A stretch of 64,000 nt of DNA, from IMG/VR virus record IMGVR_UViG_3300042261_002385, positions 1 to 64,000 of that record; one strand, given 5' to 3'. Position numbers and translations under genes: made by a program. The notes under the pieces are model-generated. The model did not search any database. It was given only the letters and a program-made list of their open reading frames with translations, and was not told the DNA's origin. Each line of letters begins with the position of its first letter. Position 1 is the first letter of the stretch. Of the stretch, positions 2,994 to 63,638 are shown in pieces.

Positions 2994-3575
2994 ATGATTT
3001 GTAAAAAATGCAATACTGAAAAAAGTCTATCTGATTTTCATAATGATACCAAATCAAAAACTGGTAAACAATGCTATTGTAAAACTTGTGCAAAAAAAAT
3101 ACAAAACCAATACTATAAAGAAAACAAAAACAGAGTATTACAGAGAAAAAAAATCTATAGAAATACGGATGAATATAAAAAAAGGAGTAGAGAGTATGAA
3201 TTGGAATATTCAAAAATTCGAAAAGTAAGAGGTAAAACACTTACTGTAAGATTTTCTATGTCATTAAGAGATATACTAAAGAGATGTCTAAAATATAAAG
3301 GAATAAAAAAGAATAGTAGAACTTTCGAAATACTTGGTTATGATGTAAAAAAATTTAGACAGAGAATAGAATGTCAATTTAAAGATGGTATGTGTTGGGA
3401 AAATTATGGAGATTGGGAAATAGACCATAAAAAACCAATTAGTAAATTTGATAAAAGTGCAAAAATTAGTTTAATTAATTCATTATGTAATTTACAACCT
3501 TTGTGGAAAAAAGATAATAGAATGAAAGGAAACAAATTTGATTTAAAAAACGGCTTAGGACCCGTTATAGTTTAG
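2994..3575 (+). CDS. free-standing HNH homing endonuclease with N-terminal Zn ribbon
   Basis: CKKC..CYCKTC N-terminus; WEIDHKKPIS...NLQPLWKKDNRMKGNK HNH motif. Confidence 0.85.
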   Translation: MICKKCNTEKSLSDFHNDTKSKTGKQCYCKTCAKKIQNQYYKENKNRVLQRKKIYRNTDEYKKRSREYELEYSKIRKVRGKTLTVRFSMSLRDILKRCLKYKGIKKNSRTFEILGYDVKKFRQRIECQFKDGMCWENYGDWEIDHKKPISKFDKSAKISLINSLCNLQPLWKKDNRMKGNKFDLKNGLGPVIV

Positions 3576-6483: not shown

Positions 6484-6544
6484 ATTTTAACGTTTCTACA
6501 AAGATAATAATCCTTTTTAAGATGAAAAAATAATATATACCATT

Positions 6545-6937
6545 ATGAAGAGACTAAGAAGATTCAATGAAAGTAAAACTGATATAGATTATGACTATGT
6601 ATATCAATGCTTTGCTGACCTTTTAGATGATAATAAGGCAGAAATTAGACAATATGAAACTGATTATCAAAAGTATATTACTATAGATTTAAAAATTAAT
6701 CAATCTAATCCAGAAAGAAGAGACACTGGAAGAACTATGAAGATTGAAGACTCTAAATTATTTGACTATATAAACGGTGTAAAATCAAATAGCGAATTGT
6801 TACAAGAAGTTGAAATTGCATTAAATAGACTATCGGAAGAATATCCAGAATATAGAGTCAATTTTGATGTATATGCTTATTCAATTCATATAAATGTCTT
6901 TGGTGGAGAGGAGAAAAAAGAACAGTATCCATTTTAA
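6545..6937 (+). CDS. putative virion-internal protein (MKRLRRFNES tag)
   Basis: Tag-family N-terminus; AATATATA at 6532-6539. Confidence 0.7.
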   Translation: MKRLRRFNESKTDIDYDYVYQCFADLLDDNKAEIRQYETDYQKYITIDLKINQSNPERRDTGRTMKIEDSKLFDYINGVKSNSELLQEVEIALNRLSEEYPEYRVNFDVYAYSIHINVFGGEEKKEQYPF

Positions 6938-6938
6938 G

Positions 6939-7775
6939 ATGAAAAAATTAGAAACATATAAGTCTTTCTTTGAATCTCAAAAACAATATTCTATTTATGA
7001 CTTCTATGATTATCTTAGAAATAACCATTGGTCAAATACTGATATATCAACTTTAGAAAGATGGACTGACCATTTTGTAGGTGAAGGTTGGTGGAATAAA
7101 ATCAAATCACATGTTGATAGAATTTTTCAGGTTCTTTCAGAAGTTGACATGAATCATATCAGTGATGCAATGCTCGAAATATTTGATACAGTTCCTGATG
7201 AAAAAGAAAAGAATATCTATTGTGCCGTTCTTTATGGAGATTACGAAAAGATAAATGATAGCAATGAGTATAAATATAATGGAACTATGCCTATTTTTGA
7301 ATCAGATGATATGAAAAGAAAAAGTTATATTTTACATAATATAATTTTTGAAATTGTAAGACCAACAATATCTTACTCAAAAATAACAGGCAATGATATA
7401 GAATTTAGACCGACACCAGAAGCATATTACGTTACCGATAAAAAGTGGCAATGTCAAAATTTTGACTTTTCTCAATTTACCGAACTCAAAGACTATGAGA
7501 TGAAAAGTCTGAAATTCTATTCTCCAGAAAATGTGCTTAGTATGTATAAACCAGGTGTTGTAATTGATATTGGTGGTTGGTCATCTTTAGATTCTCGTAG
7601 AACAGGTGAAATGAGTTTAGTAGAGTTAGAAAAAGAGTTAGATGATAGAATTAATTTAATTACAGCAGAAATAGAATATGAAGAAGTCTTTTGGCCATTT
7701 TCAAGAAAAGAAAGATACTTTGATACATCACAACCAATATATGACTATACTTTAAAAATATTATTGAAAATGTAA
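6939..7775 (+). CDS. putative virion-internal protein (MKKLETYKSFFES tag)
   Basis: Start moved from track 6894 to ATG 6939, 1 nt after the previous stop, which exposes the tag. Confidence 0.7.
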   Translation: MKKLETYKSFFESQKQYSIYDFYDYLRNNHWSNTDISTLERWTDHFVGEGWWNKIKSHVDRIFQVLSEVDMNHISDAMLEIFDTVPDEKEKNIYCAVLYGDYEKINDSNEYKYNGTMPIFESDDMKRKSYILHNIIFEIVRPTISYSKITGNDIEFRPTPEAYYVTDKKWQCQNFDFSQFTELKDYEMKSLKFYSPENVLSMYKPGVVIDIGGWSSLDSRRTGEMSLVELEKELDDRINLITAEIEYEEVFWPFSRKERYFDTSQPIYDYTLKILLKM

Positions 7776-8584
7776 TGAAGTATCTAAAAAAGTACATTCA
7801 ATTTATTTCAGAAGAGATTTTTAATCTTCCATCTTGGCCTTCACTATTTAATCAAGACAAAAATGGATATGTTTTACCAATGTTAATTTGGTCACAGGAT
7901 GTATTCGATGGTGCTTTTAGAGAAGGTGACTATGATACAAAAAAAACACCAACTGGTGTGAAACTTGTAAAGAGTTGGAATTTAGAAAACAATTTAATGG
8001 GTTCATTTTTTGAGTTTGTTGGTGAATTTGTAATTTTCACACATATTAAAGAAGTTAATTTAGAATTTTGTGAATCTAAAGAAAAGGGATATACACTTCC
8101 GGAAAATTTAAGTGAAAGAGTAAATAATTTATATGAACAATATGGTTTAGGAACTCCTATTTTTGTCACAGTTGTTAAAAAATATGAAGATGGTGTAAAG
8201 GTAGTGACCACTGGTTCTAATTGGCACTTAGTTTCTAAATTAGGTATTAAAAAGTTAGGCACAACTACTTATAAAGGATTTGTAAAAGAAACAAAGATTC
8301 CACTTTATAGTGATGATACACAAACACCGGAATCAAAAGAAGCTATTTGGAAAAAACTTTTACAAGATGAAAGTTGTGAGGTAGTTGTTTGGTCTCAAAA
8401 TATGAAAAAAGAATTTCCAATTGAGATGATTGATGGAAATCCTTACTACAGTGGAAATATTCCTGTTTATTTTGGTGATAAAGAAATGAACCAACAATTT
8501 TTAGATTTAGCTGGCGAAGATGAAGAAAAGTATAAAAAGATAAAATCTCTAACAAAAAACTTAAAATTGAAATCGGTTAAATGA
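7775..8584 (+). CDS. putative virion-internal protein (MKYLKKYIQFISEE tag)
   Basis: Tag-family N-terminus; coupled by TAATG overlap. Confidence 0.7.
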   Translation: MKYLKKYIQFISEEIFNLPSWPSLFNQDKNGYVLPMLIWSQDVFDGAFREGDYDTKKTPTGVKLVKSWNLENNLMGSFFEFVGEFVIFTHIKEVNLEFCESKEKGYTLPENLSERVNNLYEQYGLGTPIFVTVVKKYEDGVKVVTTGSNWHLVSKLGIKKLGTTTYKGFVKETKIPLYSDDTQTPESKEAIWKKLLQDESCEVVVWSQNMKKEFPIEMIDGNPYYSGNIPVYFGDKEMNQQFLDLAGEDEEKYKKIKSLTKNLKLKSVK

Positions 8585-9129
8585 AATATTTAAAATCATA
8601 TAAATTATTTGAAAAAAAGAAAGAAGACAAAGTTGAACTACCTAATCTTTCAGAACTCAAAATTGTTGAATTAAAAACAATTGAGGGTAAAAATAAATGG
8701 CATCACAAAAAAGATAAATTGATACATATGGTTTTAGATTTAGGAGAGTGGGAAGAATTTCCATCAAGTAAAATTCCAAACTTTCATAAAAACATTAAAA
8801 AATACATTCCATCAATGAATGAACATAGATGTTCAATTGGTCGTAAGGGTGGTTTTTTCACAAGAGTTAAAAAAGGAACCTGGCTAGGTCACATAATTGA
8901 ACATATAGCACTTGAATTACAAACATTAGCTGGTCATGATACAGGATTCGGTAGAACAAGAGGCACTGGAAAAAAAGCAGAATATAATGTCATATTTAAT
9001 TATGAAGAAAAACAAGTTGGTTTATTAGCCGCTAGAGAAGCTGTTAAAGTAGCCAAGTCTTTAATTAAAGAAGAAAATCCTGAAATAGAAGATATAGTAA
9101 AAAAGTTAAAGGATAAAATTAAAAAATGA
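8581..9129 (+). CDS. stand-alone cyanophycin synthetase N-domain homologue with N-terminal tag
   Basis: LDLGEWEEFPS..IPNF...HRCSIGRKGGFFTRVKKGTWLGHIIEHIALELQTLAG...FGRTR matches the CphA1 N domain, including Cx19Hx3H. Confidence 0.85.
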   Translation: MKYLKSYKLFEKKKEDKVELPNLSELKIVELKTIEGKNKWHHKKDKLIHMVLDLGEWEEFPSSKIPNFHKNIKKYIPSMNEHRCSIGRKGGFFTRVKKGTWLGHIIEHIALELQTLAGHDTGFGRTRGTGKKAEYNVIFNYEEKQVGLLAAREAVKVAKSLIKEENPEIEDIVKKLKDKIKK

Positions 9130-9836
9130 AGTATCTAAAATCATATAAATTATTTGAATCTGTTGATAAATCAAAATTCCCAACTTATACAGAATTACAT
9201 GACTTCTTTGTAGAATTAGAAGATGATGATATTACTAAATTCAATTATAGAGGTGATATGCTTTATCTATTTTTTCCACAAAGATGGGAAAGATCCATTC
9301 AATCACGATTATATTATGATATGTCTTTTGAAGAAGACTTTTTAAATCATAAACCAAAAGAACTAATGGGTGAAACTTGGAGTGAATTTTTTATGGATCC
9401 ACTGGATTATTCAGATAAAAGATTTCTTAGAAGCAGAGCAGAATGGATCCACTTAAATGATATAGAGGAAAAAAGAACAAATATACAACAACTAAGAAAA
9501 GATGTTAAAACATTCGAAGAATTATTTGTAGAAGAAATAGAAAAAGGCAATATAAAAGCTTATCCATTTATACGTATGAGATTTGATATCTTTAAACCAG
9601 AACACTTAGATGAAGTAATAGAAAGACTAAAAATGGTTTATGAAGCTACTGATTTCAGACCACTCTGGGGATTCTGGCTTGAAGATTATGCTGATGAAAA
9701 TAGTTTTGATGTAATGACTTTTGTAAACTCAAGTCTTTATTTAGTTAACTGCTCAGATGAAGAATATCAACATTTAGCTGAAATATTTAATGAAAGTAAT
9801 TTAGATAAACAAGTAACAAAACATTTCATAAAGTAG
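9126..9836 (+). CDS. putative virion-internal protein (MKYLKSYKLFES tag)
   Basis: First 11 residues identical to those of the 8581 protein. Confidence 0.7.
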   Translation: MKYLKSYKLFESVDKSKFPTYTELHDFFVELEDDDITKFNYRGDMLYLFFPQRWERSIQSRLYYDMSFEEDFLNHKPKELMGETWSEFFMDPLDYSDKRFLRSRAEWIHLNDIEEKRTNIQQLRKDVKTFEELFVEEIEKGNIKAYPFIRMRFDIFKPEHLDEVIERLKMVYEATDFRPLWGFWLEDYADENSFDVMTFVNSSLYLVNCSDEEYQHLAEIFNESNLDKQVTKHFIK

Positions 9837-9878: not shown

Positions 9879-10625
9879 ATGAAAACATGCTCTAAATGTA
9901 AAATAGAAAAAGAATTATCTGATTTTTATAAAAAGAAAGCCTCTAAAGATGGCTTTAGAAGTGAATGCAAGAAATGTATTCTAAATAAAGGAAAAATTTA
10001 TTACCAGGATAATAAAGATGAAAGATTAGATTATTACTACAATAACAGAGAAGAAATTCTTGAAAAGAAAAAGGTATATTACCAGGATAATATAGAGAAA
10101 ATATCTGAAAAGGATAAAAAACGTTATAGTGAAAATAAAGAAAAAGAGAATGAACGAACTAAAATGTATTATTCCGAAAATAAAGATATTATTTCTGAAA
10201 GAAAAAGAAAAAAGTATAATGAAAATCCAGATAAAGAACGAAAACGTATTTCCTTATATAGAAAGAAAAATAAAGATAGAATAAATGAGAAGATTAGATT
10301 AAGAAAACAAGATGATACTTTGTATAAAGCAAAAATGGCAATACGCTCAGTCATATCTTGTTCAATTAGAAACCAAGGATATAAGAAAAATAGTCTAACA
10401 TATGAAATACTATGTTGTTCTTATGAAGATTTTAAGTCATATATAGAGGAACAATTTACAGAAGGAATGTCTTGGGAGAATTATGGAGAATGGCATTTGG
10501 ATCATAAAACACCGATAAGTTGGGCAGATAGTGAAGAAAAAGTCTATGAATTAAATCATTACTTAAATTTTCAACCATTATGGGCTTTTGACAATCTATC
10601 AAAAGGAAACAAATGGTCAGATTAA
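9879..10625 (+). CDS. free-standing HNH homing endonuclease (same family as 2994-3575)
   Basis: CSKC..CKKC; WHLDHKTPIS...NFQPLWAFDNLSKGNK. Confidence 0.85.
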   Translation: MKTCSKCKIEKELSDFYKKKASKDGFRSECKKCILNKGKIYYQDNKDERLDYYYNNREEILEKKKVYYQDNIEKISEKDKKRYSENKEKENERTKMYYSENKDIISERKRKKYNENPDKERKRISLYRKKNKDRINEKIRLRKQDDTLYKAKMAIRSVISCSIRNQGYKKNSLTYEILCCSYEDFKSYIEEQFTEGMSWENYGEWHLDHKTPISWADSEEKVYELNHYLNFQPLWAFDNLSKGNKWSD

Positions 10626-10860: not shown

Positions 10861-11829
10861 ATGGCAATTAATGAATTAGATGACCTATTCAATGGCGGAC
10901 TGGACAGTAAAATGGACTTCTTAAATGAGCAAAAAACAACAACAAACAACGACGGTATTTACCGAGTTGATCTTTCAAAATGTAAGGATAAAAAGAAGGG
11001 TTGGCGCAGTGTTGTTCGTTTTCTCCCTAACTTGACCAAAGATGGTAAAGTTGGTCAATCAGCAATTGAGAAAATTACTCATTATGTTGATATTAAACAA
11101 CCTAAAGAATTAAGCGGATGGTTTGATAGTCCAAAGAATTTCAATGAGAAATGTGCTTTGACTGATCTTTACTATACAATGCAAAATTCTAAAAATGCAA
11201 TTCTTATTGAGAAGTCAAAACAGTTGAAGTATTCTAAAAAATACTACTCTTATGTTTTAGTATTAGAAGATGAGCAACAACCAGAAAATGTTGGAAAAAT
11301 TATGATTTTCCAATATGGTAAAACAATCAAAGATAAAATTCAAGCTGAGAAGAACGGTGAAATCTCAGGTGTTCCTTGTAACGTATTTGATTTAGCAGCA
11401 GGAAAAGATTTCGTTCTTGTAGTTAAAGAAATTCAAACTGGTGACGAAACATATCCTGATTACAAAATGAGTATGTTTAAACCAGAAACTACTTCTCTTC
11501 CAATTTACTTTAAAGAGAAAGGAGCTTTCAAAAATGCACCTCTTAATGAAGGTAAAATCGAAGCTTCGGTTCAAGGTAAAATCAAAGATTTTTTACTTGA
11601 AAGAGACCACGATTTAGAAGAGTATTCACCAAAAGCTCTTACCGAAGAACAACAAGCTAAAATCACTGAGATTACAAATTTCTTAACTGGTAAAGCTTCA
11701 TCTTCTTACAGCTCAGCTAAGGCAGAGTCAAAACCTTCTTCAGATGATTTTGATTTTGATGATAATTTCTCTTCAACTACATCTTCTGCTACAGAAGAAG
11801 AAGAGGATGACTTCTTCGCTGATATGTAA
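10861..11829 (+). CDS. gp32: single-stranded DNA-binding protein, T4 gp32-like
   Basis: VVRFLP, YYSYVLVLED, IFQYGKTIKDKI, FDLAAGKDF and YPDY motifs; acidic C-terminal tail. Confidence 0.9.
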   Translation: MAINELDDLFNGGLDSKMDFLNEQKTTTNNDGIYRVDLSKCKDKKKGWRSVVRFLPNLTKDGKVGQSAIEKITHYVDIKQPKELSGWFDSPKNFNEKCALTDLYYTMQNSKNAILIEKSKQLKYSKKYYSYVLVLEDEQQPENVGKIMIFQYGKTIKDKIQAEKNGEISGVPCNVFDLAAGKDFVLVVKEIQTGDETYPDYKMSMFKPETTSLPIYFKEKGAFKNAPLNEGKIEASVQGKIKDFLLERDHDLEEYSPKALTEEQQAKITEITNFLTGKASSSYSSAKAESKPSSDDFDFDDNFSSTTSSATEEEEDDFFADM

Positions 11830-32043: not shown

Positions 32044-34176
32044 TTACTCTTCGGTTTTCTTCTTACGAGTTTTCTTTTTCTTTTCTGATTCAATAGTTAC
32101 TACCATTTTTTCTGACTCACTGTTATAATCAAGAATTAAAGTAGAACCTTTTTCAGGATTATATTGAATAATGTCCTCTGTTAAAACATCTTCAACGTGT
32201 CTTTGTATTGCTCTTTTTAAAGGACGTGCTCCGTATTGTGGATCAAATCCTTCAGAAGCAATATACTCGATAGCAGAGTCAGTAATTGTAAGTTTGAATT
32301 CCATTTTCTCAACTCTTTCAATCAATTTTTCTAATTCAATTTTGATAATTTGATTAATATCATCTTTAGAAAGAGAATTAAACATAACTACATCATCTAC
32401 ACGATTTAAGAACTCAGGTGCAAATTTTTTCTTCAACTCTTTTTCAATCACAGCTTTTGATTCATCTTCAGCTGCTGCTAATTTATTTTTAGTTGAGAAT
32501 CCAACTCCAGTTCCAAAATCTTTCAACTGACGTGAACCAGTGTTTGAAGTCATGATGATAATTGAGTTTTTGAAATTTACTTTACGACCTAAAGAATCTG
32601 TTAATTGGCCATCATCTAAAACTTGTAAAAGTAAATTGAAAACCTCAGGATGAGCTTTTTCAATCTCATCGAGTAAGATTACAGAATAAGGCTTACGTCT
32701 AACTTTTTCAGTTAACTGACCACCTTCATCGTGACCAACATATCCTGGAGGAGCTCCGACTAAACGAGAGACTGCGAATTTCTCCATATACTCAGACATA
32801 TCAATTCTTACAAGTGCATCTTCTGAATCAAAAAGATATTTAGCTAATACCTTTGCCAACTGTGTTTTACCGACACCAGTTGGTCCTAAGAACATAAATG
32901 AACCAATAGGTTTGTTAGGATCTTTTAATCCAACACGACCTCTTTGAATAGCTTTAACAATTTTTCTAACTGCTTCTTCTTGACCAATAACTTTACCAGT
33001 AATTGATGTTCCCATTTTAGCAAGTTTTTCATTTTCATTCTGAGAAACTTTTGTTACCGGAATCCCAGACATCATTGCAACAACTTCGGCTACTGCGTCT
33101 TCATCAACTGTTTGACGATTGTTTTTCTGGTCTTCTTCCCAAGACTTGCGAGCTTTTTCTAAGTCAGTGTTTAATTGTCTTTCAACATCTCTCAACTTAG
33201 CAGCTTCTTCATATTTTTGAGAACGAATTACATCATTTTTCTTTTCTTTAATTTCAATAATCTTTTTTTCAATGTCTGTGATTTCTTTAGGAACATTGAT
33301 ATTAGAAATATGAACTCTTGCTCCTACTTCATCTAAAGCATCAATTGCTTTATCTGGTAAAAATCTATCATTAAGATATCTTTCAGTCAAGTCAACACAA
33401 GCTTTTATAGCAGCATCTGTGTAAGAAACATTGTGATGATGTTCGTAACGGTCTTTAATATTATTCAATATCTGGACAGTCTCTTCAGCAGTAGCTGGCT
33501 CAACTTGCACTTTTTGAAAACGTCTTTCTAAAGCTCCATCTTTTTCAATGTGTTTGCGATATTCATCTAACGTAGTTGCTCCAATGATTTGAATCTCACC
33601 ACGAGCTAAAGCTGGTTTTAACATATTAGATGCATCCAAAGAACCAGAAGCTCCACCTGCACCGATGATAGTATGAATTTCATCAATAAAAAGAATAATA
33701 TCTGGTTCTTTTTCCATTTCAGACATAAGTGCTTTAATACGTTCTTCAAATTGTCCACGATATTTAGTTCCAGCGACCATAGAAGCCAAATCTAACATCA
33801 CAACTCTTTTATTAAAAAGTAATCTTGAAACTTTTCGTTGAACGATTCTCAAAGCCAGTCCTTCAGCAATTGAAGACTTACCAACACCTGGCTCACCAAT
33901 TAAAATTGGGTTATTCTTTTTTCTACGAGAGAGAATTTGTGATACTCTTTCAATTTCTTTTTCTCTACCTACGATTGGATCTAGTCTGCCATCTTCAGCC
34001 ATTTTAGTCAAATCTCGGCTATAAGTGTCCAAAACTGGAGTTTTAGACTTACCTTCATTCTTCTTTGAAGAACTAGAACCAAACTTATCATCATCTTCAT
34101 CATCCTCTAAAGAAGCTTTAATGTCTGGACTTACATAATCTTTACCCTCTAAGTTATTTGTTGTGTTATTCATCAT
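32044..34176 (-). CDS. clpC: ClpC-type AAA+ chaperone lacking the N-terminal Clp-repeat domain
   Basis: Two Walker A motifs (GEPGVGKS, GPTGVGKT), UVR-type middle domain, VGF ClpP loop; begins just before KSKTPVLD. Confidence 0.9.
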   Translation of the reverse strand: MMNNTTNNLEGKDYVSPDIKASLEDDEDDDKFGSSSSKKNEGKSKTPVLDTYSRDLTKMAEDGRLDPIVGREKEIERVSQILSRRKKNNPILIGEPGVGKSSIAEGLALRIVQRKVSRLLFNKRVVMLDLASMVAGTKYRGQFEERIKALMSEMEKEPDIILFIDEIHTIIGAGGASGSLDASNMLKPALARGEIQIIGATTLDEYRKHIEKDGALERRFQKVQVEPATAEETVQILNNIKDRYEHHHNVSYTDAAIKACVDLTERYLNDRFLPDKAIDALDEVGARVHISNINVPKEITDIEKKIIEIKEKKNDVIRSQKYEEAAKLRDVERQLNTDLEKARKSWEEDQKNNRQTVDEDAVAEVVAMMSGIPVTKVSQNENEKLAKMGTSITGKVIGQEEAVRKIVKAIQRGRVGLKDPNKPIGSFMFLGPTGVGKTQLAKVLAKYLFDSEDALVRIDMSEYMEKFAVSRLVGAPPGYVGHDEGGQLTEKVRRKPYSVILLDEIEKAHPEVFNLLLQVLDDGQLTDSLGRKVNFKNSIIIMTSNTGSRQLKDFGTGVGFSTKNKLAAAEDESKAVIEKELKKKFAPEFLNRVDDVVMFNSLSKDDINQIIKIELEKLIERVEKMEFKLTITDSAIEYIASEGFDPQYGARPLKRAIQRHVEDVLTEDIIQYNPEKGSTLILDYNSESEKMVVTIESEKKKKTRKKKTEE

Positions 34177-37116: not shown

Positions 37117-37204
37117 TGGGAAAGGAGTGGACTCGAACCACCGAAGATCTATTGAGACCAGTCACATTACTATGTAACTCCATTTGCCGCTCTGGAACTT
37201 CCCC
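37117..37204 (-). tRNA. atypical tRNA-Tyr-type gene with 8-nt anticodon loop (AUAGUAAU)
   Basis: Type II cloverleaf: GGGGAAG/CTTTCCC, A73, variable arm GGTCT-CAAT-AGATC, anticodon stem GTTAC/GTGAC. Confidence 0.75.
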
Positions 37205-48928: not shown

Positions 48929-50344
48929 CTATTTTCTTATGAAATTTTCATAAGTAGCTAATTTTACTAGTTTAGGTTGTTTTAGATTTCTACACTCTTG
49001 AACAAAATTATCTAATATAATCCAAGTCTCCTGTAATTCTTCAGGATGAAATAATATTCCATATCTACCTAATTTTTTATTAGATATACCTGCAATGGTT
49101 TCACCAAGCATTGCAATATTTTCAAAATCAACAGGAACATTTACTGGGTAGTCGTGAAAACAAAAATTTACTTTCTGCTGTGTCAAGTCAATTCCTTTGA
49201 ATAAAAAATGTTCAGTATCAAAATCAGTCAAGTTGAAAAATCCGCAGTTTAGTTCTCCTCCATCGATACTTCGTCCGTAAAACTTAGCCATAGACTGAAA
49301 TCCATAACACATTGCTAAAATTGGACAGGTAAGAATTTTTAACGCCTCCTCTGAAGCTTCATATTCTGTGTTTGAATCCGGCTTTCTCATACTGTAATCA
49401 GAACCAGTTGATAAAGCACCAATGATGTTATATTCTTGATTATATTTTCTTACTTCTTCAGGTGAACAAGCCGCTTTAAAAGGAATATCTCTGACTCTCA
49501 AATATCTAGCTACTTTAGGAAAATATTTAAATTGAGGTGATTTAGCATTGTTTATAATTAAAAATATATCCTCTTTGTCAGAGTTGGATTCTTTGTATGC
49601 ATTTCCAAACTCAATCAAATCAGAATCATCATTATATAGGTGTTTTGGATTGTCATTTTCATGTTCATAACTTTCGTAGTGCTCATCAAGAAATTTTAAG
49701 TCTTCTGAAGTAATTTTGATACCATGGTCAAAACAATTAAAAAATTTCACCAAGTCTTCTATTGACTCATCAGTAAATCCCCAATGAGTTTCAGGATCAT
49801 ACTTTGAACCAACTGAAGTATAATGAATTACATTAATTTTATTTGGAGCTTCAAGTGTAAACTCAACAGCCATATTGTTACCATAAGTAATATCAACCAA
49901 AAGTTTGATTTGGTCTTCTTCTGTGTGTAGATCTCCTTGGCCAATTTTTGAAAAGTGTATATCAAACTCAAGCATTGCTGGTTCACCATTTTGTAAGGCG
50001 TAGTTAGGGTCTAGAGGTATAGGCTCACCAGAATTTGTAGATTTAGATTGGTCAGCACTATTATAGTAGTATGTAAACTGCACTAATGCATTATCAATAG
50101 AACATTCGTTTTTATCAAATACATATTCTTTTGTTCCAGTAACGTCTGTTAGAGTTAAATCTTTGTTTAACTTCTTTAGATTCGGATTTGAATGGATCGT
50201 GAATGTCTCTGGTAAAAGTTTTTCAAACCAATCTTGTTGAAACATAGAAATTCTACCGTCAATATGAATTGGTTCACCAGCGTGAGGAAGTGATTTATTT
50301 CTATACTCTTTACTGAGACCTTCATATTTTTTAAGATATTTCAT
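48929..50344 (-). CDS. tagged protein (MKYLKKYE) with C-terminal class I glutamine amidotransferase domain
   Basis: PILAMCYGFQ nucleophile elbow and GILFHPE His-Glu; AATATATA at 50350-50357. Confidence 0.8.
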   Translation of the reverse strand: MKYLKKYEGLSKEYRNKSLPHAGEPIHIDGRISMFQQDWFEKLLPETFTIHSNPNLKKLNKDLTLTDVTGTKEYVFDKNECSIDNALVQFTYYYNSADQSKSTNSGEPIPLDPNYALQNGEPAMLEFDIHFSKIGQGDLHTEEDQIKLLVDITYGNNMAVEFTLEAPNKINVIHYTSVGSKYDPETHWGFTDESIEDLVKFFNCFDHGIKITSEDLKFLDEHYESYEHENDNPKHLYNDDSDLIEFGNAYKESNSDKEDIFLIINNAKSPQFKYFPKVARYLRVRDIPFKAACSPEEVRKYNQEYNIIGALSTGSDYSMRKPDSNTEYEASEEALKILTCPILAMCYGFQSMAKFYGRSIDGGELNCGFFNLTDFDTEHFLFKGIDLTQQKVNFCFHDYPVNVPVDFENIAMLGETIAGISNKKLGRYGILFHPEELQETWIILDNFVQECRNLKQPKLVKLATYENFIRK

Positions 50345-51468: not shown

Positions 51469-51699
51469 TAACAAATTTTTATTAATTTTTTTAAACTGAT
51501 TTTCTAAATGTAGTTCAAGTTTTTCATTTATAAATTCTCTATCTGAAGAAAGCCAAAGTATGTCTACAGTTCTATTTTTATATCCATAATGATATCTTCT
51601 AAAGTATTTATTGTCTAACTCAACTTTAGTGTATCTAGCACAATTAGTTATAAATTTATCTTTAATAATCTTCATATTTTTAATCATAAAATCCATCAC
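51454..51699 (-). CDS. hypothetical protein
   Basis: 81 aa. Confidence 0.55.
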   Translation of the reverse strand: MMDFMIKNMKIIKDKFITNCARYTKVELDNKYFRRYHYGYKNRTVDILWLSSDREFINEKLELHLENQFKKINKNLLEKVG

Positions 51700-52924
51700 A
51701 CATATCTAAATATGACTCAGTGTCAAAAAAACTATCACCGGTATCACCTAAATCGTCTGCTTTTGAGTAATCTAATTCAGGTAAATATTGAATCAAATCA
51801 TTTCTATCACACTCAGTTGAGTAATTGTGTTTGTAATTAACTTTAAGTTTGAATCCATTCCATTCCGATGTTTCATATTCGAGGTCAAGTGATTTTAACA
51901 AAGAGTCAATTATGACTTTTTCTTCTAAAATCCTCTCTTTACACAAATCAACTGATACAACTTTTTTAGTCCATTCTTCTATTTCTATCTTTGAGACATA
52001 GTTGTATTTCTTATCGTGAAACCAAATATTTTCGGTTTTAGTTTTAGGCTTAGTAATTGAACCCCAATTATTGTAACTACTGTAACCACTTTGTCTAGCT
52101 CCATATCTAGTTCCATAGTAGTAATCATCATCATCCCAACCTGGATAGCCCCAGCCACCATAACCACCATATGATTTATACTCTGTTTTAGAAGGGTCTC
52201 TTTCGACAGGTAGATTATTCCAATCAACTTTCAAACAAGCCTCAGCTAATTTTTCTAAGTGTTCAATATTTTGAGTCTCAGAAAAAGTGTGTTCTGATTG
52301 ATATCCTACAGAAATGTTAGTACATTCTGGGTAGATAGAAATAAACTGAAAAGAATCAGTCAAAACACCAGTTGGGTCATTTTCATATTTGAAAGTGTTA
52401 TCAGCTAAATTTAATTGCTCAGATAACGCTGTTCCGAAAGCATCAGAAGCACATCTTCTACTACTTTGATAAGTAATTACAGATTTTGTTCCTCTACGGT
52501 CAAAAGATATAACTTTATTAATACCTTCTATTTTAGTTTCTTTTTGAATACCAGCGACTTTCTTAGAACCAATACATCCTACTTCTTCACCTAAGAAGAA
52601 ATAATAAAGACCAGGTATGTTGTTTTTAATCATATACAACATAATAGTGACTCCTGCTTTATCATCCGCTCCTAAAATAGATTTACCATCTGTTTTGATT
52701 ATGTTTCCATCAAATACGTGATTTACAGGTGTGTTAGCAGAAGTTGCTGTATCTAAGTGAGACGTAAACATTACATCACTTTCTCCTATTTTAATAAATA
52801 GATTTCCGAATTCATCCTCTTTAAGACCATCTACAGTGGAGAAAAGTATAGGAAATAATTCGGTTTCTGTTCCGTGAGGATAAGTCCGACTAGTCAACTC
52901 TAAGAACTTTTCTTTAATTTTCAT
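51680..52924 (-). CDS. M28/M20-like Zn peptidase with Tyr/Gly-rich linker
   Basis: SHLDT, LGADDKAG, GEEVGCIGS, SFDRRG and NISVGY..EHT motifs. Confidence 0.8.
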   Translation of the reverse strand: MKIKEKFLELTSRTYPHGTETELFPILFSTVDGLKEDEFGNLFIKIGESDVMFTSHLDTATSANTPVNHVFDGNIIKTDGKSILGADDKAGVTIMLYMIKNNIPGLYYFFLGEEVGCIGSKKVAGIQKETKIEGINKVISFDRRGTKSVITYQSSRRCASDAFGTALSEQLNLADNTFKYENDPTGVLTDSFQFISIYPECTNISVGYQSEHTFSETQNIEHLEKLAEACLKVDWNNLPVERDPSKTEYKSYGGYGGWGYPGWDDDDYYYGTRYGARQSGYSSYNNWGSITKPKTKTENIWFHDKKYNYVSKIEIEEWTKKVVSVDLCKERILEEKVIIDSLLKSLDLEYETSEWNGFKLKVNYKHNYSTECDRNDLIQYLPELDYSKADDLGDTGDSFFDTESYLDMCDGFYD

Positions 52925-55532: not shown

Positions 55533-58500
55533 ATGAGAAATTTTCTTTCTTGTTTTTTTTTATTTCTAACATCTTATCTTTTTTCTCAAAGTTGTTTACA
55601 CACACTTTACATGACCGACACATATGGTGATGGCTGGAATGGTAATTATGCGTCAGTTTCTGTGAACGGCGTTACAGTAATTTCTAACGTGACTTTAAAC
55701 AGTGGATTAGGACCAGCAACTGTCACATTTAATGCAACAGCCGGTCAAACAATAAGAGTGTGGAGATCTATCACTGGTTCTTGGACTAACGAGTGTCAAA
55801 TCCGCGTAACTAGTAGCACAGGTGCAACAGTAATAGCTCTACAAACTTTACAACCCGGTTCACCAACATCAGGAGGATCGACAGGTTCAGCTCAGTGTTC
55901 AGCCGGTGGCGGTGGATCAGCGACCTTAGTTCCTTATAGTGGATTCAACTCAGTAAATTGTGGAACAAACACAACACTCTATGACCACGGAGGTCAATTT
56001 GGTAATTACTCAAACAATGCAAATGGATATACTGTATTAAATAACGGAGGTTCGGCTGTAATATCTCTTAACGGAACTTCATCCGGTGAATCCTGTTGTG
56101 ATAGAGTAAGGATTTATTTAGGCATAGGAACTGGAGGAGCTTTAATTGGAACGTATTGGATGAATTCAAATATACCGAACATCAACTCATCTCCTGGTCA
56201 ACCTTTGACTGTTCAGTTTCTTTCAGATGGTTCAGTCACAGGAAGTGGATTCACCATAAACGTGACTTATTCAGGCAACTGTTCATCTGGTGCTCCTCCA
56301 GATCCTTCATCTATATCATCAACAAGTGCTACGATATGCACTGGACAATCAGTGACATTAACAGCGAATGGTTCAGTAGGAACTACTTATTGGTTTACGA
56401 ATGGTTGTAATACCGTAGGTCAAATTGGTACAGGTAATTCTATCACAGTCAATCCAAACACAACTACGACCTACTGGGCTAGAAACTTCAATTCCGGCTT
56501 CTGGTCTTCAGGTTGTGCTCAATACACAGTTTCAGTCACATCACTACCACAACCACCAAACCAATTAACTTATACTATCAACTGCGGAGTATCACCAACA
56601 CTTACAGCGGTCGGTGGAGCGGGAAATTACCAGTGGTGGTCTAACTCAAACGCTACTGGCTTACTGTGGTCTGGACAAACATATAATCCAGGAGCGTTAA
56701 ATCAAAATACGACTTTTTGGGTTACTACATCGAATGGTGTTTGTAACTCGACAACTAGTGCCTATCAAGTAAATACTACAGCATTAACTCAACCAACAGC
56801 AAACAACACCTCAGTGAATTGTGGAAGTTCAACCACTTTGAGCATCACAAATGCGGCAAGTAATGTCAATTGGTATACCAATTCTAATGGAACAGGACAA
56901 GTTGGTAGTGGATCAACATTTACAACACCTCAACTCACTACTAATACGACTTATTATGTTGGTTCAGGTTCTGGCGCATGTGCAACACCACTTACTCCGG
57001 TTACTGTTAGTGTAAATAATAATCTAGCACAACCTACATCAAACAACACTTCTATTAATTGTGGACAGACTTCTACACTAACCGCTTCTGGTGGAACTGG
57101 AACTTACGCCTGGTATTCTAATTCAAATGCAACTGGTCAACTCGGAACAGGTGCAAATTTTACAACACCACAACTTACAACAAATACTACTTATTATGTC
57201 ACTTCAACTGCTGGATCGGCTACTACTCAAAGCGTTGGTTTCAACAATTGTTACGCCATAAATAACTGGTCACTTCAACATTTAAACGGAGGAAATGGTT
57301 CAGTCAACACTACTGGATCACCAAATAGTATACAACTTACTGGACCTGATGGAACCGGTGGTAACTCTTATACATTATATCAAATTACTGTTGCAGCGAC
57401 AGGAACCATAAGTTGGAACTGGACAGTTTCTCACAATGACTGTAGTTATGACACCTATGGTTATAGAATAAACGGAACGGATTATCCATTGGCAACTTGT
57501 AGTGCTTCAGGTTCGACTTCAGTGAATGTAACGGCTGGTCAAACATTTGCCTTTTACGGAAGATCTCACGATGGTTGTTGCGGAACTTTTACTGCAACAA
57601 TCTCTAACTTTAACAAACCTTGCTCTGGCCAAGCTTGTTTCTCTCAACCTGTAGCTGTCACAGTAACGGTGAATCCGTTAACCGCGCCTGTAGTAAATAA
57701 CACTTCTATTAATTGTGGTTCTACTGCGACGATAAACGCTTCTGGTAATGGAACTATAACCTGGTATCAAAATTCTAACCTGACTGGATCTGTTGCCACC
57801 GGAAATCAATGGACAACTCCGACTCTTACAACATCAACAACATATTATTTACAATCAACTAGTGGTTCATGTCAGAGCTCGTCGACTCCGGTTACGGTGA
57901 CCGTAAACCCACTAGCGTCTCCTACTGTTTCCGGAAACACATCATTGTGTGTTGGAAATAATACTACACTCTCAGCGTCTGGTGGTAGTAGCTATACCTG
58001 GTTTGCAAACTCTAACGGAACTGGTCAATTAGGAACCGGATCAAACTATACCACTCCAAATTTAAATTCAAATACGACATATTATGTTCAATCAGGAACT
58101 GCTCCTCAGACACAAACCGCAGTATTCAATATTAATAGTTTTGGCCAATTAATCAATATGAACTCAAATTGTGGAGGCGGTTCTTATTATAATGGATGTA
58201 GTGGATCAACAGGGTTTAGTTGGGTTAGTTCTATACCAGCTGGAGCTACTATTACATCAGTTCAGATTCAGTTATCGGTCGGTGTTGAGTGTCAAGCAGG
58301 AACGAGGTCAACAACACTCAATGGTGTTGGTGGTCCTACTTTCAACACAATTGGTAATTGTAGCTGTTCAGGTAGTGTAAACCCAATAATTACCCTAAAT
58401 ATGAATGTGGCTAATTATATAGCCAATGGAACTAATCAATTTTTAATTACTAATCCACCAAGTTGCTTTGGTTTATTCAGTGGTAGTGGTGGATTACCAG

Positions 58501-60722: not shown

Positions 60723-61772
60723 ATGAAATTAAAGTTTTTATTATTGTTCATATTAAGTTGTCTACTGAATATTTCATTTTCACAAACACAGACCGTTAAT
60801 TTCAATTATACTGGTTCAGTTCAGACTTGGACTGTGCCACAGTGTGTAACTTCCATCAACGTAGTTGTAGCAGGTGCCAAAGGTGGTGGAGCTACAGGAG
60901 GAAATGGAGCTAGACTAACAGCAACTATCCCAGTCACACCGGGTCAAGTTTTGAATATTTATGTAGGAGGACAAGGCAGCTGTGGTAACAATTCAGGTGG
61001 TTGGAACGGTGGTGGAACAGGACATGCATCAAATCCAGCAAATGTTAATTATAATTCTTGTGGTGGCGGTGGAGCGACTGATATCAGAATCGGAGGAAAC
61101 GCACTAGTGAATAGAGTTATCGTTGCCGGAGGTGGTGGTGGAAAAAGTGGTGGTTCTTCTCCAGTCGCAGGTGGAGCAGCCAACTGTCAAAACGGCGCAC
61201 CAGGTGTTAGCACATACGGAGCAGGAGGCGGTGGTGGAACACAAGCTGCAGGCGGAGCTGGAGGAGCTCCTTGGGCAGGAACACCTCCTGGAGGTCAAGC
61301 CGGAACATTAGGTCAGGGAGGAAATGGTGGTTTCTGGTCAACTGCCTCTGGTGGAGGTGGTGGTGGTGGATACTACGGCGGTGGTGGCGGAGGTAACGAC
61401 GGCTGTTGCACTGGTTCAAATGGAGGTGGTGGTGGAGGTGCTGGTTCTTCTCTTCTACCAGCAGGAGGAACTTGTCTACCATCAAATAACACCGGAAATG
61501 GTTATGCTTCTATCACTTATACACCAGTCAATTTAGTTATAAATCCAACATCAACAAATGTGACTTGTTTTGGACTTTGTAATGGAACAGCAAATGCTAA
61601 TTATCCAGGTGCGACTTATCTGTGGTCAAATGGAGCAACAACACAATCAATAAGTAATCTCTGTCCAGGAAATTATACAGTAACTGTTAATTTGAACGGT
61701 TGCACGGCTACTGGCAGTGTCACTATAACACAACCACCTCAAATAGTTTTAGGCCCGATAAGCCACAACTAA
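60723..61772 (+). CDS. exported glycine-rich-domain protein with SprB-like repeat, ends PISHN
   Basis: Signal peptide ...ISFS/Q; GGGGATDIR and VAGGGGG motifs; YLWSNGATTQSISNLCPGNYTVTV. Confidence 0.85.
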   Translation: MKLKFLLLFILSCLLNISFSQTQTVNFNYTGSVQTWTVPQCVTSINVVVAGAKGGGATGGNGARLTATIPVTPGQVLNIYVGGQGSCGNNSGGWNGGGTGHASNPANVNYNSCGGGGATDIRIGGNALVNRVIVAGGGGGKSGGSSPVAGGAANCQNGAPGVSTYGAGGGGGTQAAGGAGGAPWAGTPPGGQAGTLGQGGNGGFWSTASGGGGGGGYYGGGGGGNDGCCTGSNGGGGGGAGSSLLPAGGTCLPSNNTGNGYASITYTPVNLVINPTSTNVTCFGLCNGTANANYPGATYLWSNGATTQSISNLCPGNYTVTVNLNGCTATGSVTITQPPQIVLGPISHN

Positions 61773-61790
61773 TAAAAATTAAATGAAAAA

Positions 61791-62357
61791 ATGAAAAATT
61801 TATTTTTACTACTATTGACTCTTTTGACAACAACAGTATTTGGTCAACTTGTTACAACAAATCCTGATACTGTATGTTATCAGACCCAGGCACTTTCTCA
61901 GTATCAAGTTACTTCAGTTGGTGCTGGAACTTACACTTGGACAGTTCCTGCCTGTGCCACTATAACTTCAGGTCAAGGCACGAATCAAATTCAAGTAAAC
62001 TGGTCTAACTGTCCTCCAGGATTAATCAACAATGCGATAAGTGTTGTTTACACTTCACAAGCTGGATGTCCTTCACCAGCTGTCAATTTGAATGTTTTGA
62101 TATACCAAGTCATACCAACTATAACACCTATTGGTCCTTTCTGTGTAACTGATCCTTGTGTTGCACTATCTGGATTACCAGCTGGTGGGACATGGACCGG
62201 AAATGGTGTTGTAAATGGTCAGTTCTGTCCTGGACAAGCTGGTCCAGGAGCTGCTACAATCACCTATACTTATACTAACAGTGGTTGTTCATTTACAGCA
62301 ACTACAAATACAGGTGTCTCTCCACAACCTACATTGACACCAATACAACACAATTAA
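61791..62357 (+). CDS. exported PKD/Ig-like protein, ends PIQHN
   Basis: Signal peptide ...TVFG/Q; YTWTVP...ITSGQGTNQIQVNW; GGTWTGNGV...F.P. Confidence 0.85.
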   Translation: MKNLFLLLLTLLTTTVFGQLVTTNPDTVCYQTQALSQYQVTSVGAGTYTWTVPACATITSGQGTNQIQVNWSNCPPGLINNAISVVYTSQAGCPSPAVNLNVLIYQVIPTITPIGPFCVTDPCVALSGLPAGGTWTGNGVVNGQFCPGQAGPGAATITYTYTNSGCSFTATTNTGVSPQPTLTPIQHN

Positions 62358-62364
62358 AAATTAT

Positions 62365-63369: not shown

Positions 63370-63458
63370 TGGTACTTCTGGTCGGACTCGAACCGACACG
63401 GACACAATGTCCAAGGGATTTTAAGTCCCTCGCGTGCTACCAATTTCGCCACAGAAGC
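63370..63458 (-). tRNA. tRNA-Leu(TAA), CCA encoded
   Basis: Type II cloverleaf; loop CTTAAAA. Confidence 0.95.
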
Positions 63459-63464
63459 TTGTTG

Positions 63465-63547
63465 TACCCTGGGAGAGACTCGAACTCTCACGCCTTTCGG
63501 CACCAGATCCTAAATCTGGCGTGTGCTACCAATTTCACCACCAAGGT
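63465..63547 (-). tRNA. tRNA-Leu(TAG)
   Basis: Type II cloverleaf; loop TTTAGGA. Confidence 0.95.
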
Positions 63548-63631: not shown

Positions 63632-63638
63632 AATTTTG

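What the first reader, a model, noticed from the sequence alone, without database searches (positions are those of the whole stretch)
8581..9129. Stand-alone cyanophycin-synthetase N-domain with intact hydrolytic Zn site, carrying the capsid tag
Seen: HRC-x19-HIIEH plus FGRTR, with none of the ATP-grasp or Mur-ligase domains of CphA. Established: the CphA1 N domain binds cyanophycin (multi-Arg-poly-Asp) and contains a cryptic Cx19Hx3H metallo-hydrolase site that cleaves polymer into primers. Inference: the phage packages a free endo-cyanophycinase-like enzyme, either to mobilise host N reserves at infection or to act on another Asp/Arg-rich target. This is unusual cargo for a phage.
Basis: partly seen in the sequence, partly recalled or inferred. 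Interest (0 to 1): 0.75.

Follow-up and report, generated by a model that had tools for sequence, protein, structure and literature searches.

The report
Free cyanophycin-cutting domain in huge phage
A 436-kb freshwater phage carries, as a separate small gene, only the polymer-cutting N domain of the bacterial nitrogen-store enzyme cyanophycin synthetase, with every catalytic residue intact and a short address peptide in front, so the phage probably breaks open its host's nitrogen reserve.

Summary
ORF 8581-9129 (+) encodes 182 aa: an 11-aa leader (MKYLKSYKLFE), a 14-aa linker and a complete CphA1 N domain (aa 26-178). Pfam PF18921 scores 147.5 bits. The AF2 model (pLDDT 90.8) overlays Synechocystis CphA1 at 1.2 A.

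The Cx19HxxEH metal site, its second shell and the cyanophycin-contacting side chains are invariant in 87 phage homologues. dN/dS is 0.11. The genome has no Mur-ligase domain or S51 cyanophycinase, and no ATP-grasp domain follows the ORF.

The gene belongs to a single-branch family of stand-alone N domains in huge phages with T4-type heads (Mahaphage clade, probable Bacteroidota hosts). It is found in lakes, rivers and drinking water. The closest cellular relatives are Bacteroidota CphA1 (50-57% identity).

The "capsid tag" is real as a portable leader on 41 otherwise unrelated ORFs. It ends in L-F-E, the T4 gp21 cleavage motif. The genome has a T4-type portal and capsid protein, and a protease-scaffold full of [LI]AE repeats. 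Sister phages put their own leader dialect on the same domain.

Enzyme activity, substrate, host and packaging are all inferred, not shown. I read it as a free endo-cyanophycinase, possibly capsid-loaded. It is a new variant of a known kind.

The parts
8581..9129 (+). Whole ORF, 182 aa: leader + linker + CphA1-type N domain, stop at 9127-9129
8581..8613 (+). N-terminal leader MKYLKSYKLFE (aa 1-11), ending in L-F-E; disordered in the model
   Evidence: motif on 41 ORFs, synonymous codon variation; pLDDT under 50 for aa 1-15; T4 CTS and the L/I-x-E rule
8614..8655 (+). Linker KKKEDKVELPNLSE (aa 12-25), lysine- and glutamate-rich, with a conserved LP.[LI]S.L just before the domain
8656..9114 (+). 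CphA1 N domain proper (aa 26-178 = SuCphA1 residues 1-153)
8824..8904 (+). Metal and catalytic motif H82-x-C84-x19-H104-x-x-E107-H108 (SuCphA1 H57, C59, H79, E82, H83)
8947..8961 (+). FGRTR (aa 123-127; R125 and T126 = SuCphA1 R100 and T101, near or at the polymer)
6532..6539 (+). AATATATA promoter-like box in front of the tightly packed gene run 6545-9836 that contains the ORF; the next box is at 9867
7775..8584 (+). Upstream neighbour, 269 aa, with the same kind of leader (MKYLKKY...), no known family; absent in the close relative L114
9126..9836 (+). Downstream neighbour, 236 aa, with a leader identical to the ORF's over 11 residues, no known family

Best explanation
The ORF encodes a free-standing, catalytically intact copy of the N domain of cyanophycin synthetase 1. 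In the bacterial enzyme this domain holds the cyanophycin chain, a poly-Asp backbone with Arg on each side chain. It also cuts the chain internally at a Cys/His/His metal site (tentatively Zn in the published structure) with a Glu general base. The phage lineage captured only this domain, most likely from a Bacteroidota CphA1. It has kept the domain under purifying selection in many huge phages, with every metal ligand, second-shell residue and polymer-contacting side chain unchanged. The most likely job is therefore the same chemistry without the synthetase: an endo-cyanophycinase that chops the host's cyanophycin store into short soluble oligomers. That would create many chain ends for the host's own cyanophycinase and isoaspartyl dipeptidase, and so free Asp and Arg for a 436-kb phage with a high nitrogen demand. 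In front of the domain sits an 11-residue leader that this genome attaches to about 40 otherwise unrelated proteins. It resembles the T4 capsid targeting sequence and ends in L-F-E, the cleavage motif of the T4-type prohead protease that this phage also encodes. So the enzyme is probably loaded into the prohead, trimmed, and delivered with the DNA. Shown: gene, domain identity, fold, residue conservation, selection, family distribution, portability of the leader, T4-type head module. Inferred: metal binding, hydrolysis, cyanophycin as substrate, nitrogen mobilisation, host phylum, packaging and cleavage.
For: Domain identity: PF18921 at 147.5 bits. phmmer to 7lg5 gives E 5.5e-38 with aa 26-176 aligned to residues 1-151. 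The AF2 model has pLDDT 90.8. Foldseek top hits are CphA1 N domains, with TM 0.81, rmsd 1.2 A and 46% identity over 155 columns, and no other fold family scores.

Active site: the equivalents of H57, C59, S60, F67, R70, H79, E82, H83, E87, R100, T101 and Y110 are invariant in 87 of 87 phage homologues. Their roles are taken from PMC9262961.

Selection: dN/dS is 0.11 against the 80%-identical orthologue in a 433-kb contig. The gene is 82% conserved where its neighbours are only 35-55% conserved.

Family: there are 511 short homologues, many on contigs of 130-433 kb, and 20 IMG/VR viral contigs carry it. All 45 phage rows lie on one side of a branch with SH-aLRT 96.

Source and host: the best cellular matches are Bacteroidota CphA1 at 50-57% identity. 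Portal relatives are Mahaphage-clade huge phages, Lak and PTm1, a clade predicted to infect Bacteroidetes (PMC7162821). Neighbouring or nearby genes carry T9SS-tail and CHU_C Ig domains. TAnnTTTG boxes are enriched upstream of ORFs.

Leader: 41 of 522 ORFs carry it, and they fall into 40 unrelated groups once the first 14 residues are removed. Conservation is at the amino-acid level, with synonymous variation. [LI]xE ending at residues 8-16 occurs in 23/41 tagged against 94/481 untagged ORFs, p 1e-6. The genome has a T4 gp20 portal (E 5e-59), a gp23 capsid protein (7e-29) and a head maturation protease (phrog_207, 9e-33) fused to a scaffold with 9 or more SEY[LI]AE repeats. T4 IPII and IPIII start MKTYQEFIAE. 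Other phage lineages put their own leader dialect (MNLQE.IRRILREE, MIRLRDLLTES) on the same domain.
Against: No activity, metal or substrate data exist for any stand-alone N domain. In CphA1 the N-domain hydrolysis is slow (hours). The authors argue it is tuned to be weak, and two polymer contacts come from the M domain, which is absent here. The phage has no cyanophycinase of its own; I did not search for a dipeptidase. The host is not identified, and cyanophycin in it is assumed.

The general leader consensus (MKHLK.FE.F) lacks L/I at P3 in many copies. Leader-bearing proteins include a glutamine amidotransferase and a racemase-like protein, which are odd capsid cargo. The AATATATA box in front of the gene run also precedes ribonucleotide reductase, so late timing cannot be claimed. 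RNA-labelled runs were probably DNA, so there is no proof of transcription.
Confidence: 0.5

Rival explanations
1. Same enzyme and substrate, but it is not virion cargo. It would be an ordinary intracellular auxiliary metabolic protein. The shared leader would serve another purpose: a common translation-start or regulatory peptide, an address for some other assembly, or a homology patch that lets gene cassettes be swapped.
For: Leader-bearing proteins include metabolic enzymes (GATase, racemase-like). The leader-coding DNA of genes 8581 and 9126 is nearly identical. The close relative L114 lacks gene 7775 exactly between two leaders. A co-occurring contig carries a different 949-nt insert between the same two leader sequences. 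The complex prediction gave no support (which is no evidence either way).
Against: Conservation is at the amino-acid level with free synonymous change. Leaders of quite different sequence in other lineages all end in [LI]-x-E and sit on the same domain. The head module is T4-like, with a scaffold full of the same motif.
Confidence: 0.25
2. The domain has been put to a new use. It would be a small metallopeptidase or polymer-binding module that acts on something other than cyanophycin, such as an Asp/Arg/Glu-rich host or phage protein or another isopeptide polymer.
For: The domain has been separate from the synthetase for a long time, judging by the long branch between phage and cellular rows. 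There are phage-specific changes next to the binding groove (P12K, Y14K) and elsewhere (A128E, Y142P). In one phage clade the domain is fused in frame to unrelated modules through Arg/Glu-rich leaders.
Against: All side chains that hold cyanophycin in the solved complex are invariant, which is unexpected if the substrate had changed. The fold is known only from cyanophycin synthetases. The leader system exists in a relative that lacks the domain (LR745206), so the domain is not the leader-processing enzyme.
Confidence: 0.15
3. It manipulates the host synthetase rather than feeding the phage. By binding or nicking polymer, it would either supply primers to CphA1 or compete with it for chains. 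This would redirect Asp, Arg and ATP flux when host translation is shut off.
For: In CphA1 the N-domain cuts make primers that raise cyanophycin yield about two-fold in E. coli.
Against: Making more of an insoluble nitrogen sink seems to cost the phage. No interaction data exist. In the published work the N domain had to sit in a particular geometry relative to the G and M sites.
Confidence: 0.07
4. It is a decaying fragment of a captured host cphA gene with no function.
For: Only the first domain of a three-domain enzyme is present.
Against: dN/dS is 0.11. The active site is invariant in 87 homologues. The family forms a single branch spread over several phage lineages and more than ten independent studies, with a clean start and stop.
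Confidence: 0.02

Closest known systems
N domain of cyanophycin synthetase 1 (Synechocystis sp. UTEX2470 CphA1; PDB 7LG5, 7LGQ, 7TXV; Pfam PF18921)
   Same: Same fold (rmsd 1.2 A over 155 columns, 44-46% identity). Same Cx19HxxEH metal site, second shell (H57, F67, E87) and polymer-contacting side chains (S60, R70, Y110, R100).
   Different: It stands alone, with no ATP-grasp (G) or Mur-ligase-like (M) domain, so it cannot make polymer and lacks the M-domain contacts S603 and E607. It carries a 25-residue leader and linker. It has phage-specific surface changes (P12K, Y14K, A128E, Y142P). E90 is Thr, as in Bacteroidota CphA1. It is encoded by a phage.
Cyanophycinases CphB/CphE (Peptidase_S51 serine peptidases)
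   Same: The predicted net effect is the same: hydrolysis of the cyanophycin backbone.
   Different: The fold and mechanism are unrelated: a serine enzyme releasing beta-Asp-Arg dipeptides, against a metal-dependent internal cut giving oligomers. No S51 gene is present in this phage.
T4 internal head proteins IPI, IPII, IPIII and Alt with their capsid targeting sequence
   Same: A short N-terminal peptide of about 10 residues (T4: MKTYQEFIAE) is shared by unrelated proteins and starts with MK. Conserved hydrophobic or aromatic residues sit at positions 4 and 7. The peptide ends in L/I-x-E, cut by the gp21-type protease. The genes lie in variable regions. This genome has T4-type portal, capsid protein and protease.
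   Different: The sequence dialect differs (MK[YH][LIV]K.[FY]E.F). About 40 carriers exist instead of a handful, including metabolic enzymes. Packaging and cleavage are untested here.
Phage auxiliary genes that mobilise host nitrogen stores, e.g. cyanophage NblA (from my own knowledge, not tested here)
   Same: Same concept: a phage gene that opens a host nitrogen reserve to feed replication.
   Different: The target is different (phycobilisomes against cyanophycin), the protein is different and the hosts are different (cyanobacteria against probable Bacteroidota).
Cargo-loading peptides of encapsulins and encapsulation peptides of bacterial microcompartments (from my own knowledge)
   Same: A short amphipathic peptide plus a flexible linker is attached to unrelated enzymes to address them to a protein shell. 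The MNLQE.IRRILREE dialect looks much like such peptides.
   Different: No encapsulin or microcompartment shell gene was looked for or seen. The only shell known here is the T4-type capsid.

Membership tests
CphA1 N domain (Pfam PF18921, Cyanophycin_syn) | Profile match above the curated cut-off over the whole domain | tested here: met
   147.5 bits against a cut-off of 27, profile positions 2-115 of 115; the same hit in the whole-genome scan
CphA1 N domain (Pfam PF18921, Cyanophycin_syn) | Fold of the solved N domain | tested here: met
   AF2 pLDDT 90.8. Foldseek to 7lgq_A gives TM 0.81 and rmsd 1.2 A over 155 columns. Only CphA1 and CphA2 N domains score
CphA1 N domain, primer-independent (hydrolytic) type | Complete Cx19HxxEH motif (C59, H79, E82, H83) | tested here: met
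   C84, H104, E107 and H108 are in register and invariant in 87 phage homologues
CphA1 N domain, primer-independent (hydrolytic) type | Second-shell residues H57, F67, E87 and polymer contacts S60, R70, E90, R100, Y110 | tested here: met
   All are present and invariant except E90, which is Thr here as in most Bacteroidota CphA1. Roles are from PMC9262961
CphA1 N domain, primer-independent (hydrolytic) type | Metal binding and endo-cleavage of (beta-Asp-Arg)n | not testable with these tools
   Needs purified protein, ICP-MS and LC-MS assays
Cyanophycin synthetase 1 (whole enzyme) | ATP-grasp G domain following the N domain | tested here: not met
   The ORF stops 4 residues after the domain. 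Cellular homologues continue with ...LGPST...RGIP... and the phage ones do not. A genome-wide ATP-grasp search was not run
Cyanophycin synthetase 1 (whole enzyme) | Mur-ligase-like M domain | tested here: not met
   No PF08245 match anywhere in the 436-kb genome, while 13 of 14 control genomes matched
Cyanophycinase (Peptidase_S51) | S51 serine peptidase domain | tested here: not met
   No PF03575 match in the genome. The protein's fold is that of the CphA N domain
T4-type capsid-targeted internal proteins | Short N-terminal peptide shared by otherwise unrelated proteins of one phage | tested here: met
   41 ORFs carry it and fall into 40 unrelated groups once the first 14 residues are removed
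T4-type capsid-targeted internal proteins | Leader ends in the prohead protease site L/I-x-E | tested here: met
   L9-F10-E11 in this protein. 39 of 53 leaders of phage N-domain proteins and 23 of 41 tagged ORFs of the genome have such a site, against 94 of 481 untagged ORFs
T4-type capsid-targeted internal proteins | gp21-type protease, scaffold and T4-type head genes in the same genome | tested here: met
   Portal_T4 E 5e-59 and Gp23 E 7e-29. phrog_207 head maturation protease E 9e-33. Pfam S77 scores only 20-22 bits, below its cut-off. Scaffold part with SEY[LI]AE repeats
T4-type capsid-targeted internal proteins | Presence in virions and removal of the leader | not testable with these tools
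   No proteome is available. The complex prediction gave no verdict

The most novel reading that the evidence does not exclude
Huge Mahaphage-type phages may have a general cargo-address system. Short N-terminal leaders occur in several lineage-specific dialects, each ending in the T4-type protease site. They are attached to dozens of unrelated proteins, including metabolic enzymes such as this endo-cyanophycinase and a glutamine amidotransferase. In one clade the modules are strung together as leader-separated polyproteins. The modules would be loaded into the prohead, cut apart there and injected with the DNA as a ready-made metabolic starter kit. The leader-coding DNA would double as the seam at which cargo cassettes are exchanged between phages.
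Probability: 0.3. Interest if true: 0.85.

Novelty: new variant of a known kind. Interest (0 to 1): 0.68.

Why it matters
For cyanophycin enzymology, this is a natural, compact, stand-alone version of the cryptic third active site of CphA1. It makes it directly testable whether the N domain is an autonomous enzyme, how fast it can be when it need not be held back inside a synthetase, and what it cuts. It could also serve as a small tool for making defined cyanophycin oligomers.

For phage biology, it would be the first cyanophycin-directed auxiliary gene I could find any trace of. It lies in phages of heterotrophic freshwater bacteria rather than cyanobacteria. That would extend the idea of phages raiding host nitrogen stores to a polymer and a host group where it has not been considered.

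The leader system around it is a testable candidate for how very large capsids are filled with many different proteins.

Tried and rejected
- tblastn of the protein against 50,697 deposited phage genomes found nothing. The nearest deposited relatives of the phage (LR745206 and others) lack the gene.
- PHROGs has no family for it or for its neighbours.
- A complex prediction of the 699-aa protease-scaffold with the 182-aa protein gave no verdict (score 0.00, folded without alignments). I count it neither for nor against.
- Laying reads of runs labelled RNA gave a few short contigs on the gene, but those libraries are probably DNA and the one clear metatranscriptome had nothing. There is no evidence on transcription.
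- I first took the AATATATA box as a late promoter because it precedes the portal, protease and other head genes. I dropped this because it also precedes the ribonucleotide reductase small subunit and 127 ORFs in all.
- I looked for a conserved partner gene next to the domain in 26 related loci and found none.
- The idea that the domain is the enzyme that processes the leaders was rejected, because a relative without the domain still has leaders.
- The sigma-70 and terminator scan of the region was no better than shuffles.
- Literature searches for cyanophycin together with phage, huge phage or auxiliary metabolic genes, and for the leader sequences themselves, found no prior description. The library is incomplete, so this is not proof of novelty.
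- The first tree placed one very long cellular row (P0202) inside the phage group. I removed it as a long-branch artefact and rebuilt the tree.
- The donor phylum is not resolved by the tree. The Bacteroidota origin rests on identity ranking, and the sampling of cellular rows was biased to best hits.
Full report
**What is there.** The window is the first 64 kb of a 436,265-bp virus record. It has 31.5% G+C, 28 tRNA genes, a CheckV completeness of 95% and no terminal repeat. ORF 8581-9129 (+) encodes 182 aa and overlaps both neighbours by ATGA.

- Pfam PF18921 (cyanophycin synthase-like N-terminal domain) matches aa 50-163 over the whole profile at 147.5 bits, against a cut-off of 27.
- phmmer against the PDB aligns aa 26-176 to residues 1-151 of Synechocystis CphA1 (E 5.5e-38).
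- The protein is therefore a 25-residue N-terminal extension followed by a complete N domain and nothing else.

**Fold.** I built an AlphaFold2 model from 60 homologues. It has mean pLDDT 90.8, and only residues 1-15 are disordered. Foldseek against the PDB returns the N domains of Synechocystis and Trichodesmium CphA1 first (TM 0.81, rmsd 1.0-1.4 A over 155 columns, 44-46% identity). More distant CphA1 and CphA2 N domains follow, and no other fold family scores.

**Active site.** Sharon et al. 2022 (PMC9262961) showed the following for SuCphA1:

- C59, H79 and H83 ligate a metal (tentatively Zn), and E82 is the general base.
- H57, F67 and E87 form the second shell.
- S60, R70, E90 and Y110 contact the polymer, with M-domain residues S603 and E607. 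R100 lies beside the site.
- The domain cuts (beta-Asp-Arg)n internally.

Window numbering is SuCphA1 numbering plus 25. I compared 87 phage stand-alone homologues with 127 cellular ones. The equivalents of H57, C59, S60, F67, R70, H79, E82, H83, E87, R100, T101 and Y110 are invariant in all 87 phage proteins. E90 is Thr, as in most Bacteroidota CphA1. dN/dS against the 80%-identical orthologue on a 433-kb contig is 0.11 for the domain and 0.10 for the leader and linker, although dS is near saturation.

Phage-specific changes are few. Several turn hydrophobic or aromatic residues into charged ones (P12K, Y14K, A128E, Y142P). This fits a domain that no longer packs against the rest of a synthetase. 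That last point is my inference.

**What is missing.** The genome has no Mur_ligase_M domain and no S51 cyanophycinase. The ORF ends four residues after the domain, whereas cellular homologues run on into the ATP-grasp domain. I did not run a genome-wide ATP-grasp search.

**The family.** The word-indexed search found 511 short homologues. The exhaustive search of 1.84 billion cluster representatives found 1,435 hits. Phage-type proteins fall into three groups.

- One group has about 175-195 aa, built like the window's protein (leader, linker, domain). Its members lie on contigs up to 433 kb.
- A second group carries the domain first and then one to three unrelated modules. Its members lie on contigs up to 279 kb.
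- There are also smaller groups with other leaders.

Twenty IMG/VR viral contigs carry the gene. I built a tree of 45 phage and 76 cellular domains. I left out one very long cellular row, which the first tree had placed inside the phage group. In this tree all phage rows lie on one side of a branch with SH-aLRT 96. This is consistent with a single capture followed by spread among phages.

The best cellular matches among 185,579 species genomes are almost all Bacteroidota CphA1 (Flavobacteriales, Chitinophagales) at 50-57% identity. Cyanobacterial CphA1 is 44-46% identical. The tree does not root the donor, so a Bacteroidota origin is favoured but not shown.

**The phage and its host.**

- The genome has a T4-type portal (E 5e-59) and a gp23-type capsid protein (E 7e-29).
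- It has a head maturation protease: phrog_207 at E 9e-33, with Pfam S77 only just under its cut-off.
- Its portal is 83% and 77% identical to those of the 635-642-kb uncultured phages LR745206 and LR756502. More distant relatives are the 735-kb phage, Sphingomonas phage PAU, the Prevotella Lak phages and Tenacibaculum phage PTm1.
- This is the Mahaphage clade, whose largest members were predicted to infect Bacteroidetes (PMC7162821).

Further hints point to that host phylum:

- A T9SS sorting-tail domain lies in the gene next to the orthologue in the 433-kb relative. There is a weak one in a 1,729-aa window protein with six CHU_C-type Ig domains.
- TAnnTTTG boxes, the Bacteroidota -7 type, occur upstream of 73 ORFs against 33 expected.

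The same DNA is found at 55-100% of sampled words in lake, river, drinking-water, lagoon and sediment metagenomes from more than ten studies. The host itself is not identified.

**The leader.** A motif M-[KR]-[YHW]-[LIV]-K-x-[FY]-E-x-F starts 41 of 522 ORFs.

- With the first 14 residues removed, these ORFs fall into 40 unrelated groups. The leader is therefore a portable module.
- Conserved residues are encoded by varying synonymous codons, so the constraint is on the peptide.
- The window's protein has the subtype MKYLKSYKLFE, which ends in L-F-E.

In T4 the first ten residues of IPIII are the capsid targeting sequence. Positions 4 and 7 direct targeting, and positions 8 and 10 direct cleavage by gp21 after L/I-x-E (PMC9026906). 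I read the T4 sequence from the T4 genome as MKTYQEFIAE.

- The phage's 699-aa protease protein continues into a scaffold-like part with nine or more 14-residue repeats, SEY[LI]AENLDKNI. It has 4.9 [LI]xE sites per 100 aa against 1.3 genome-wide. This is what a T4-style scaffold that is digested by its protease would look like.
- [LI]xE ending at residues 8-16 occurs in 23 of 41 tagged ORFs and 94 of 481 untagged ones (p 1e-6).
- Other phage lineages attach their own dialect to the same domain: MNLQE.IRRILREE, MIRLRDLLTES, M..LIKKILNE. 39 of 53 such leaders contain [LI]xE.
- In the second clade the leader also sits between modules of long ORFs, and 40 of 42 C-terminal extensions begin with it. 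These look like polyproteins.

All of this fits a T4-like address-and-cleave system. None of it proves the system exists.

There are points against this reading.

- Many copies of the general consensus lack L/I at P3.
- Carriers include a glutamine amidotransferase (window 48929-50344) and a racemase-like protein.
- The complex prediction gave no verdict.
- The leader system exists in LR745206, which lacks the N domain. The domain is therefore not the leader-processing enzyme.

**Expression context.** An AATATATA box precedes 127 of 522 ORFs: 127 of its 169 occurrences lie within 60 nt upstream of an ORF. One copy at 6532 precedes the packed gene run 6545-9836 that holds the ORF. The box also precedes the portal and protease genes and the ribonucleotide reductase small subunit. 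It marks phage transcription units but not a time class. Reads from RNA-labelled runs were uninformative. No neighbouring gene is conserved with the domain across 26 related loci. In the closest relative the upstream tagged gene 7775-8584 is simply absent.

**Interpretation.** The identity of the domain is secure. Retention of every catalytic and polymer-contacting residue under purifying selection is hard to explain unless the chemistry and the substrate are kept. This holds across phage lineages that share little else. I therefore read the protein as a free endo-cyanophycinase. Its most plausible use is to open the host's cyanophycin store, yielding soluble oligomers and many new chain ends for the host's cyanophycinase and dipeptidase.

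Delivery through the capsid is a reasonable but unproven addition. The rivals are a non-packaged auxiliary enzyme, a new substrate, manipulation of the host synthetase, and a dead fragment. The first remains quite possible. The last is contradicted by the conservation data.

**Novelty.** I found no paper in the searchable library that mentions a phage-encoded or stand-alone CphA N domain, or these leaders. The domain and its chemistry are known. A free, leader-bearing, phage-borne form is a new variant of a known kind.

Noticed in passing
L006:6001-6921 and proteins P0121, P0122, P0125, P0126: In a second clade of huge phages (contigs up to 279 kb) the N domain is the first module of ORFs of 300-456 aa. 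One to three unrelated modules follow it, each introduced by an internal copy of that clade's leader (..NLQESIRRILREE..). 10 of the 16 genes I translated in the 13-kb locus start with the same leader. This looks like leader-separated polyproteins.
   Followed up: partly
G000:C1:269288-271387 (-), outside the window: The head maturation protease is fused to a long scaffold-like region. That region has nine or more tandem 14-residue repeats (SEY[LI]AENLDKNI[AS]Y), followed by a His/Asp/Glu/Asn-rich acidic stretch. The repeat core Y-x-E-[FY]-I-A-E is close to the T4 capsid targeting sequence YQEFIAE.
   Followed up: partly
window 8582-8615 and 9142-9164: In the lake metagenome that may be the source of this DNA, a second, more abundant contig (5.5 kb, depth 27 against 12) matches only the two leader-coding stretches. 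It carries 949 different bases between them, in place of the 526-base N-domain cassette. This suggests cassette exchange at the leader sequences.
   Followed up: no
window 48929-50344 (-): A 471-aa protein with the same N-terminal leader (MKYLKKYEGL) carries a class-I glutamine amidotransferase domain (E 2.7e-7). It is a second nitrogen-metabolism enzyme with the leader. Outside the window, 399598-400371 (-) is a leader-bearing Asp/Glu-racemase-like protein that scores below the Pfam cut-off.
   Followed up: partly
window 37118-37204 (-): ARAGORN calls a tRNA of undetermined identity with a four-base anticodon (agta), next to a tRNA-Met. It could be an intron-bearing or frameshift-type tRNA, or a false call. 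The window end (63370-64000) starts a cluster of more than ten tRNA genes.
   Followed up: no
window 55533-60722 (+): A 1,729-aa protein has six CHU_C-associated Ig-like domains (E 2.9e-55) and a weak T9SS sorting-tail match at its C terminus (24.7 bits, under the cut-off). This is a Bacteroidota-style surface protein in a phage. It is followed by three paralogous genes with an ALK/LTK-type glycine-rich domain (60723-62934).
   Followed up: partly
whole genome; window examples at 736, 2982, 3879, 4927, 6532, 9867: There are two nearly exclusive upstream box types. AATATATA precedes 127 ORFs, including the portal, protease and RNR small-subunit genes. The Bacteroidota-like TAnnTTTG precedes 73 ORFs. 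Only 7 ORFs have both. This probably reflects phage-specific versus host-type transcription.
   Followed up: partly
window 9879-10625 (+), also 2994-3575 (+): HNH/endonuclease VII-like genes (phrog_1035, E 8e-25), three paralogues in the genome. One sits between the leader-gene run and the gp32-like single-strand-binding gene (10861-11829). It is absent at this place in the close relative L114, as a mobile homing-type insertion would be.
   Followed up: no
window 32044-34176 (-) and 51680-52924 (-): A full-length ClpB/ClpC-type double AAA+ chaperone (AAA_2, E 1e-69), and an M28-family peptidase that has four paralogues in the genome. One paralogue (264402-265934) lies in the head module and begins with a leader-like MELFKYNQLFEA.
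   Followed up: no
IMG/VR class of the record: The 436-kb record is classed as 'provirus'. However, a 433-kb contig from another study carries an orthologue of the N-domain gene (80% aa identity). I saw no bacterial flank in the parts examined, and the genome has a full T4-type head module and 28 tRNAs. The provirus label is probably an artefact.
   Followed up: no
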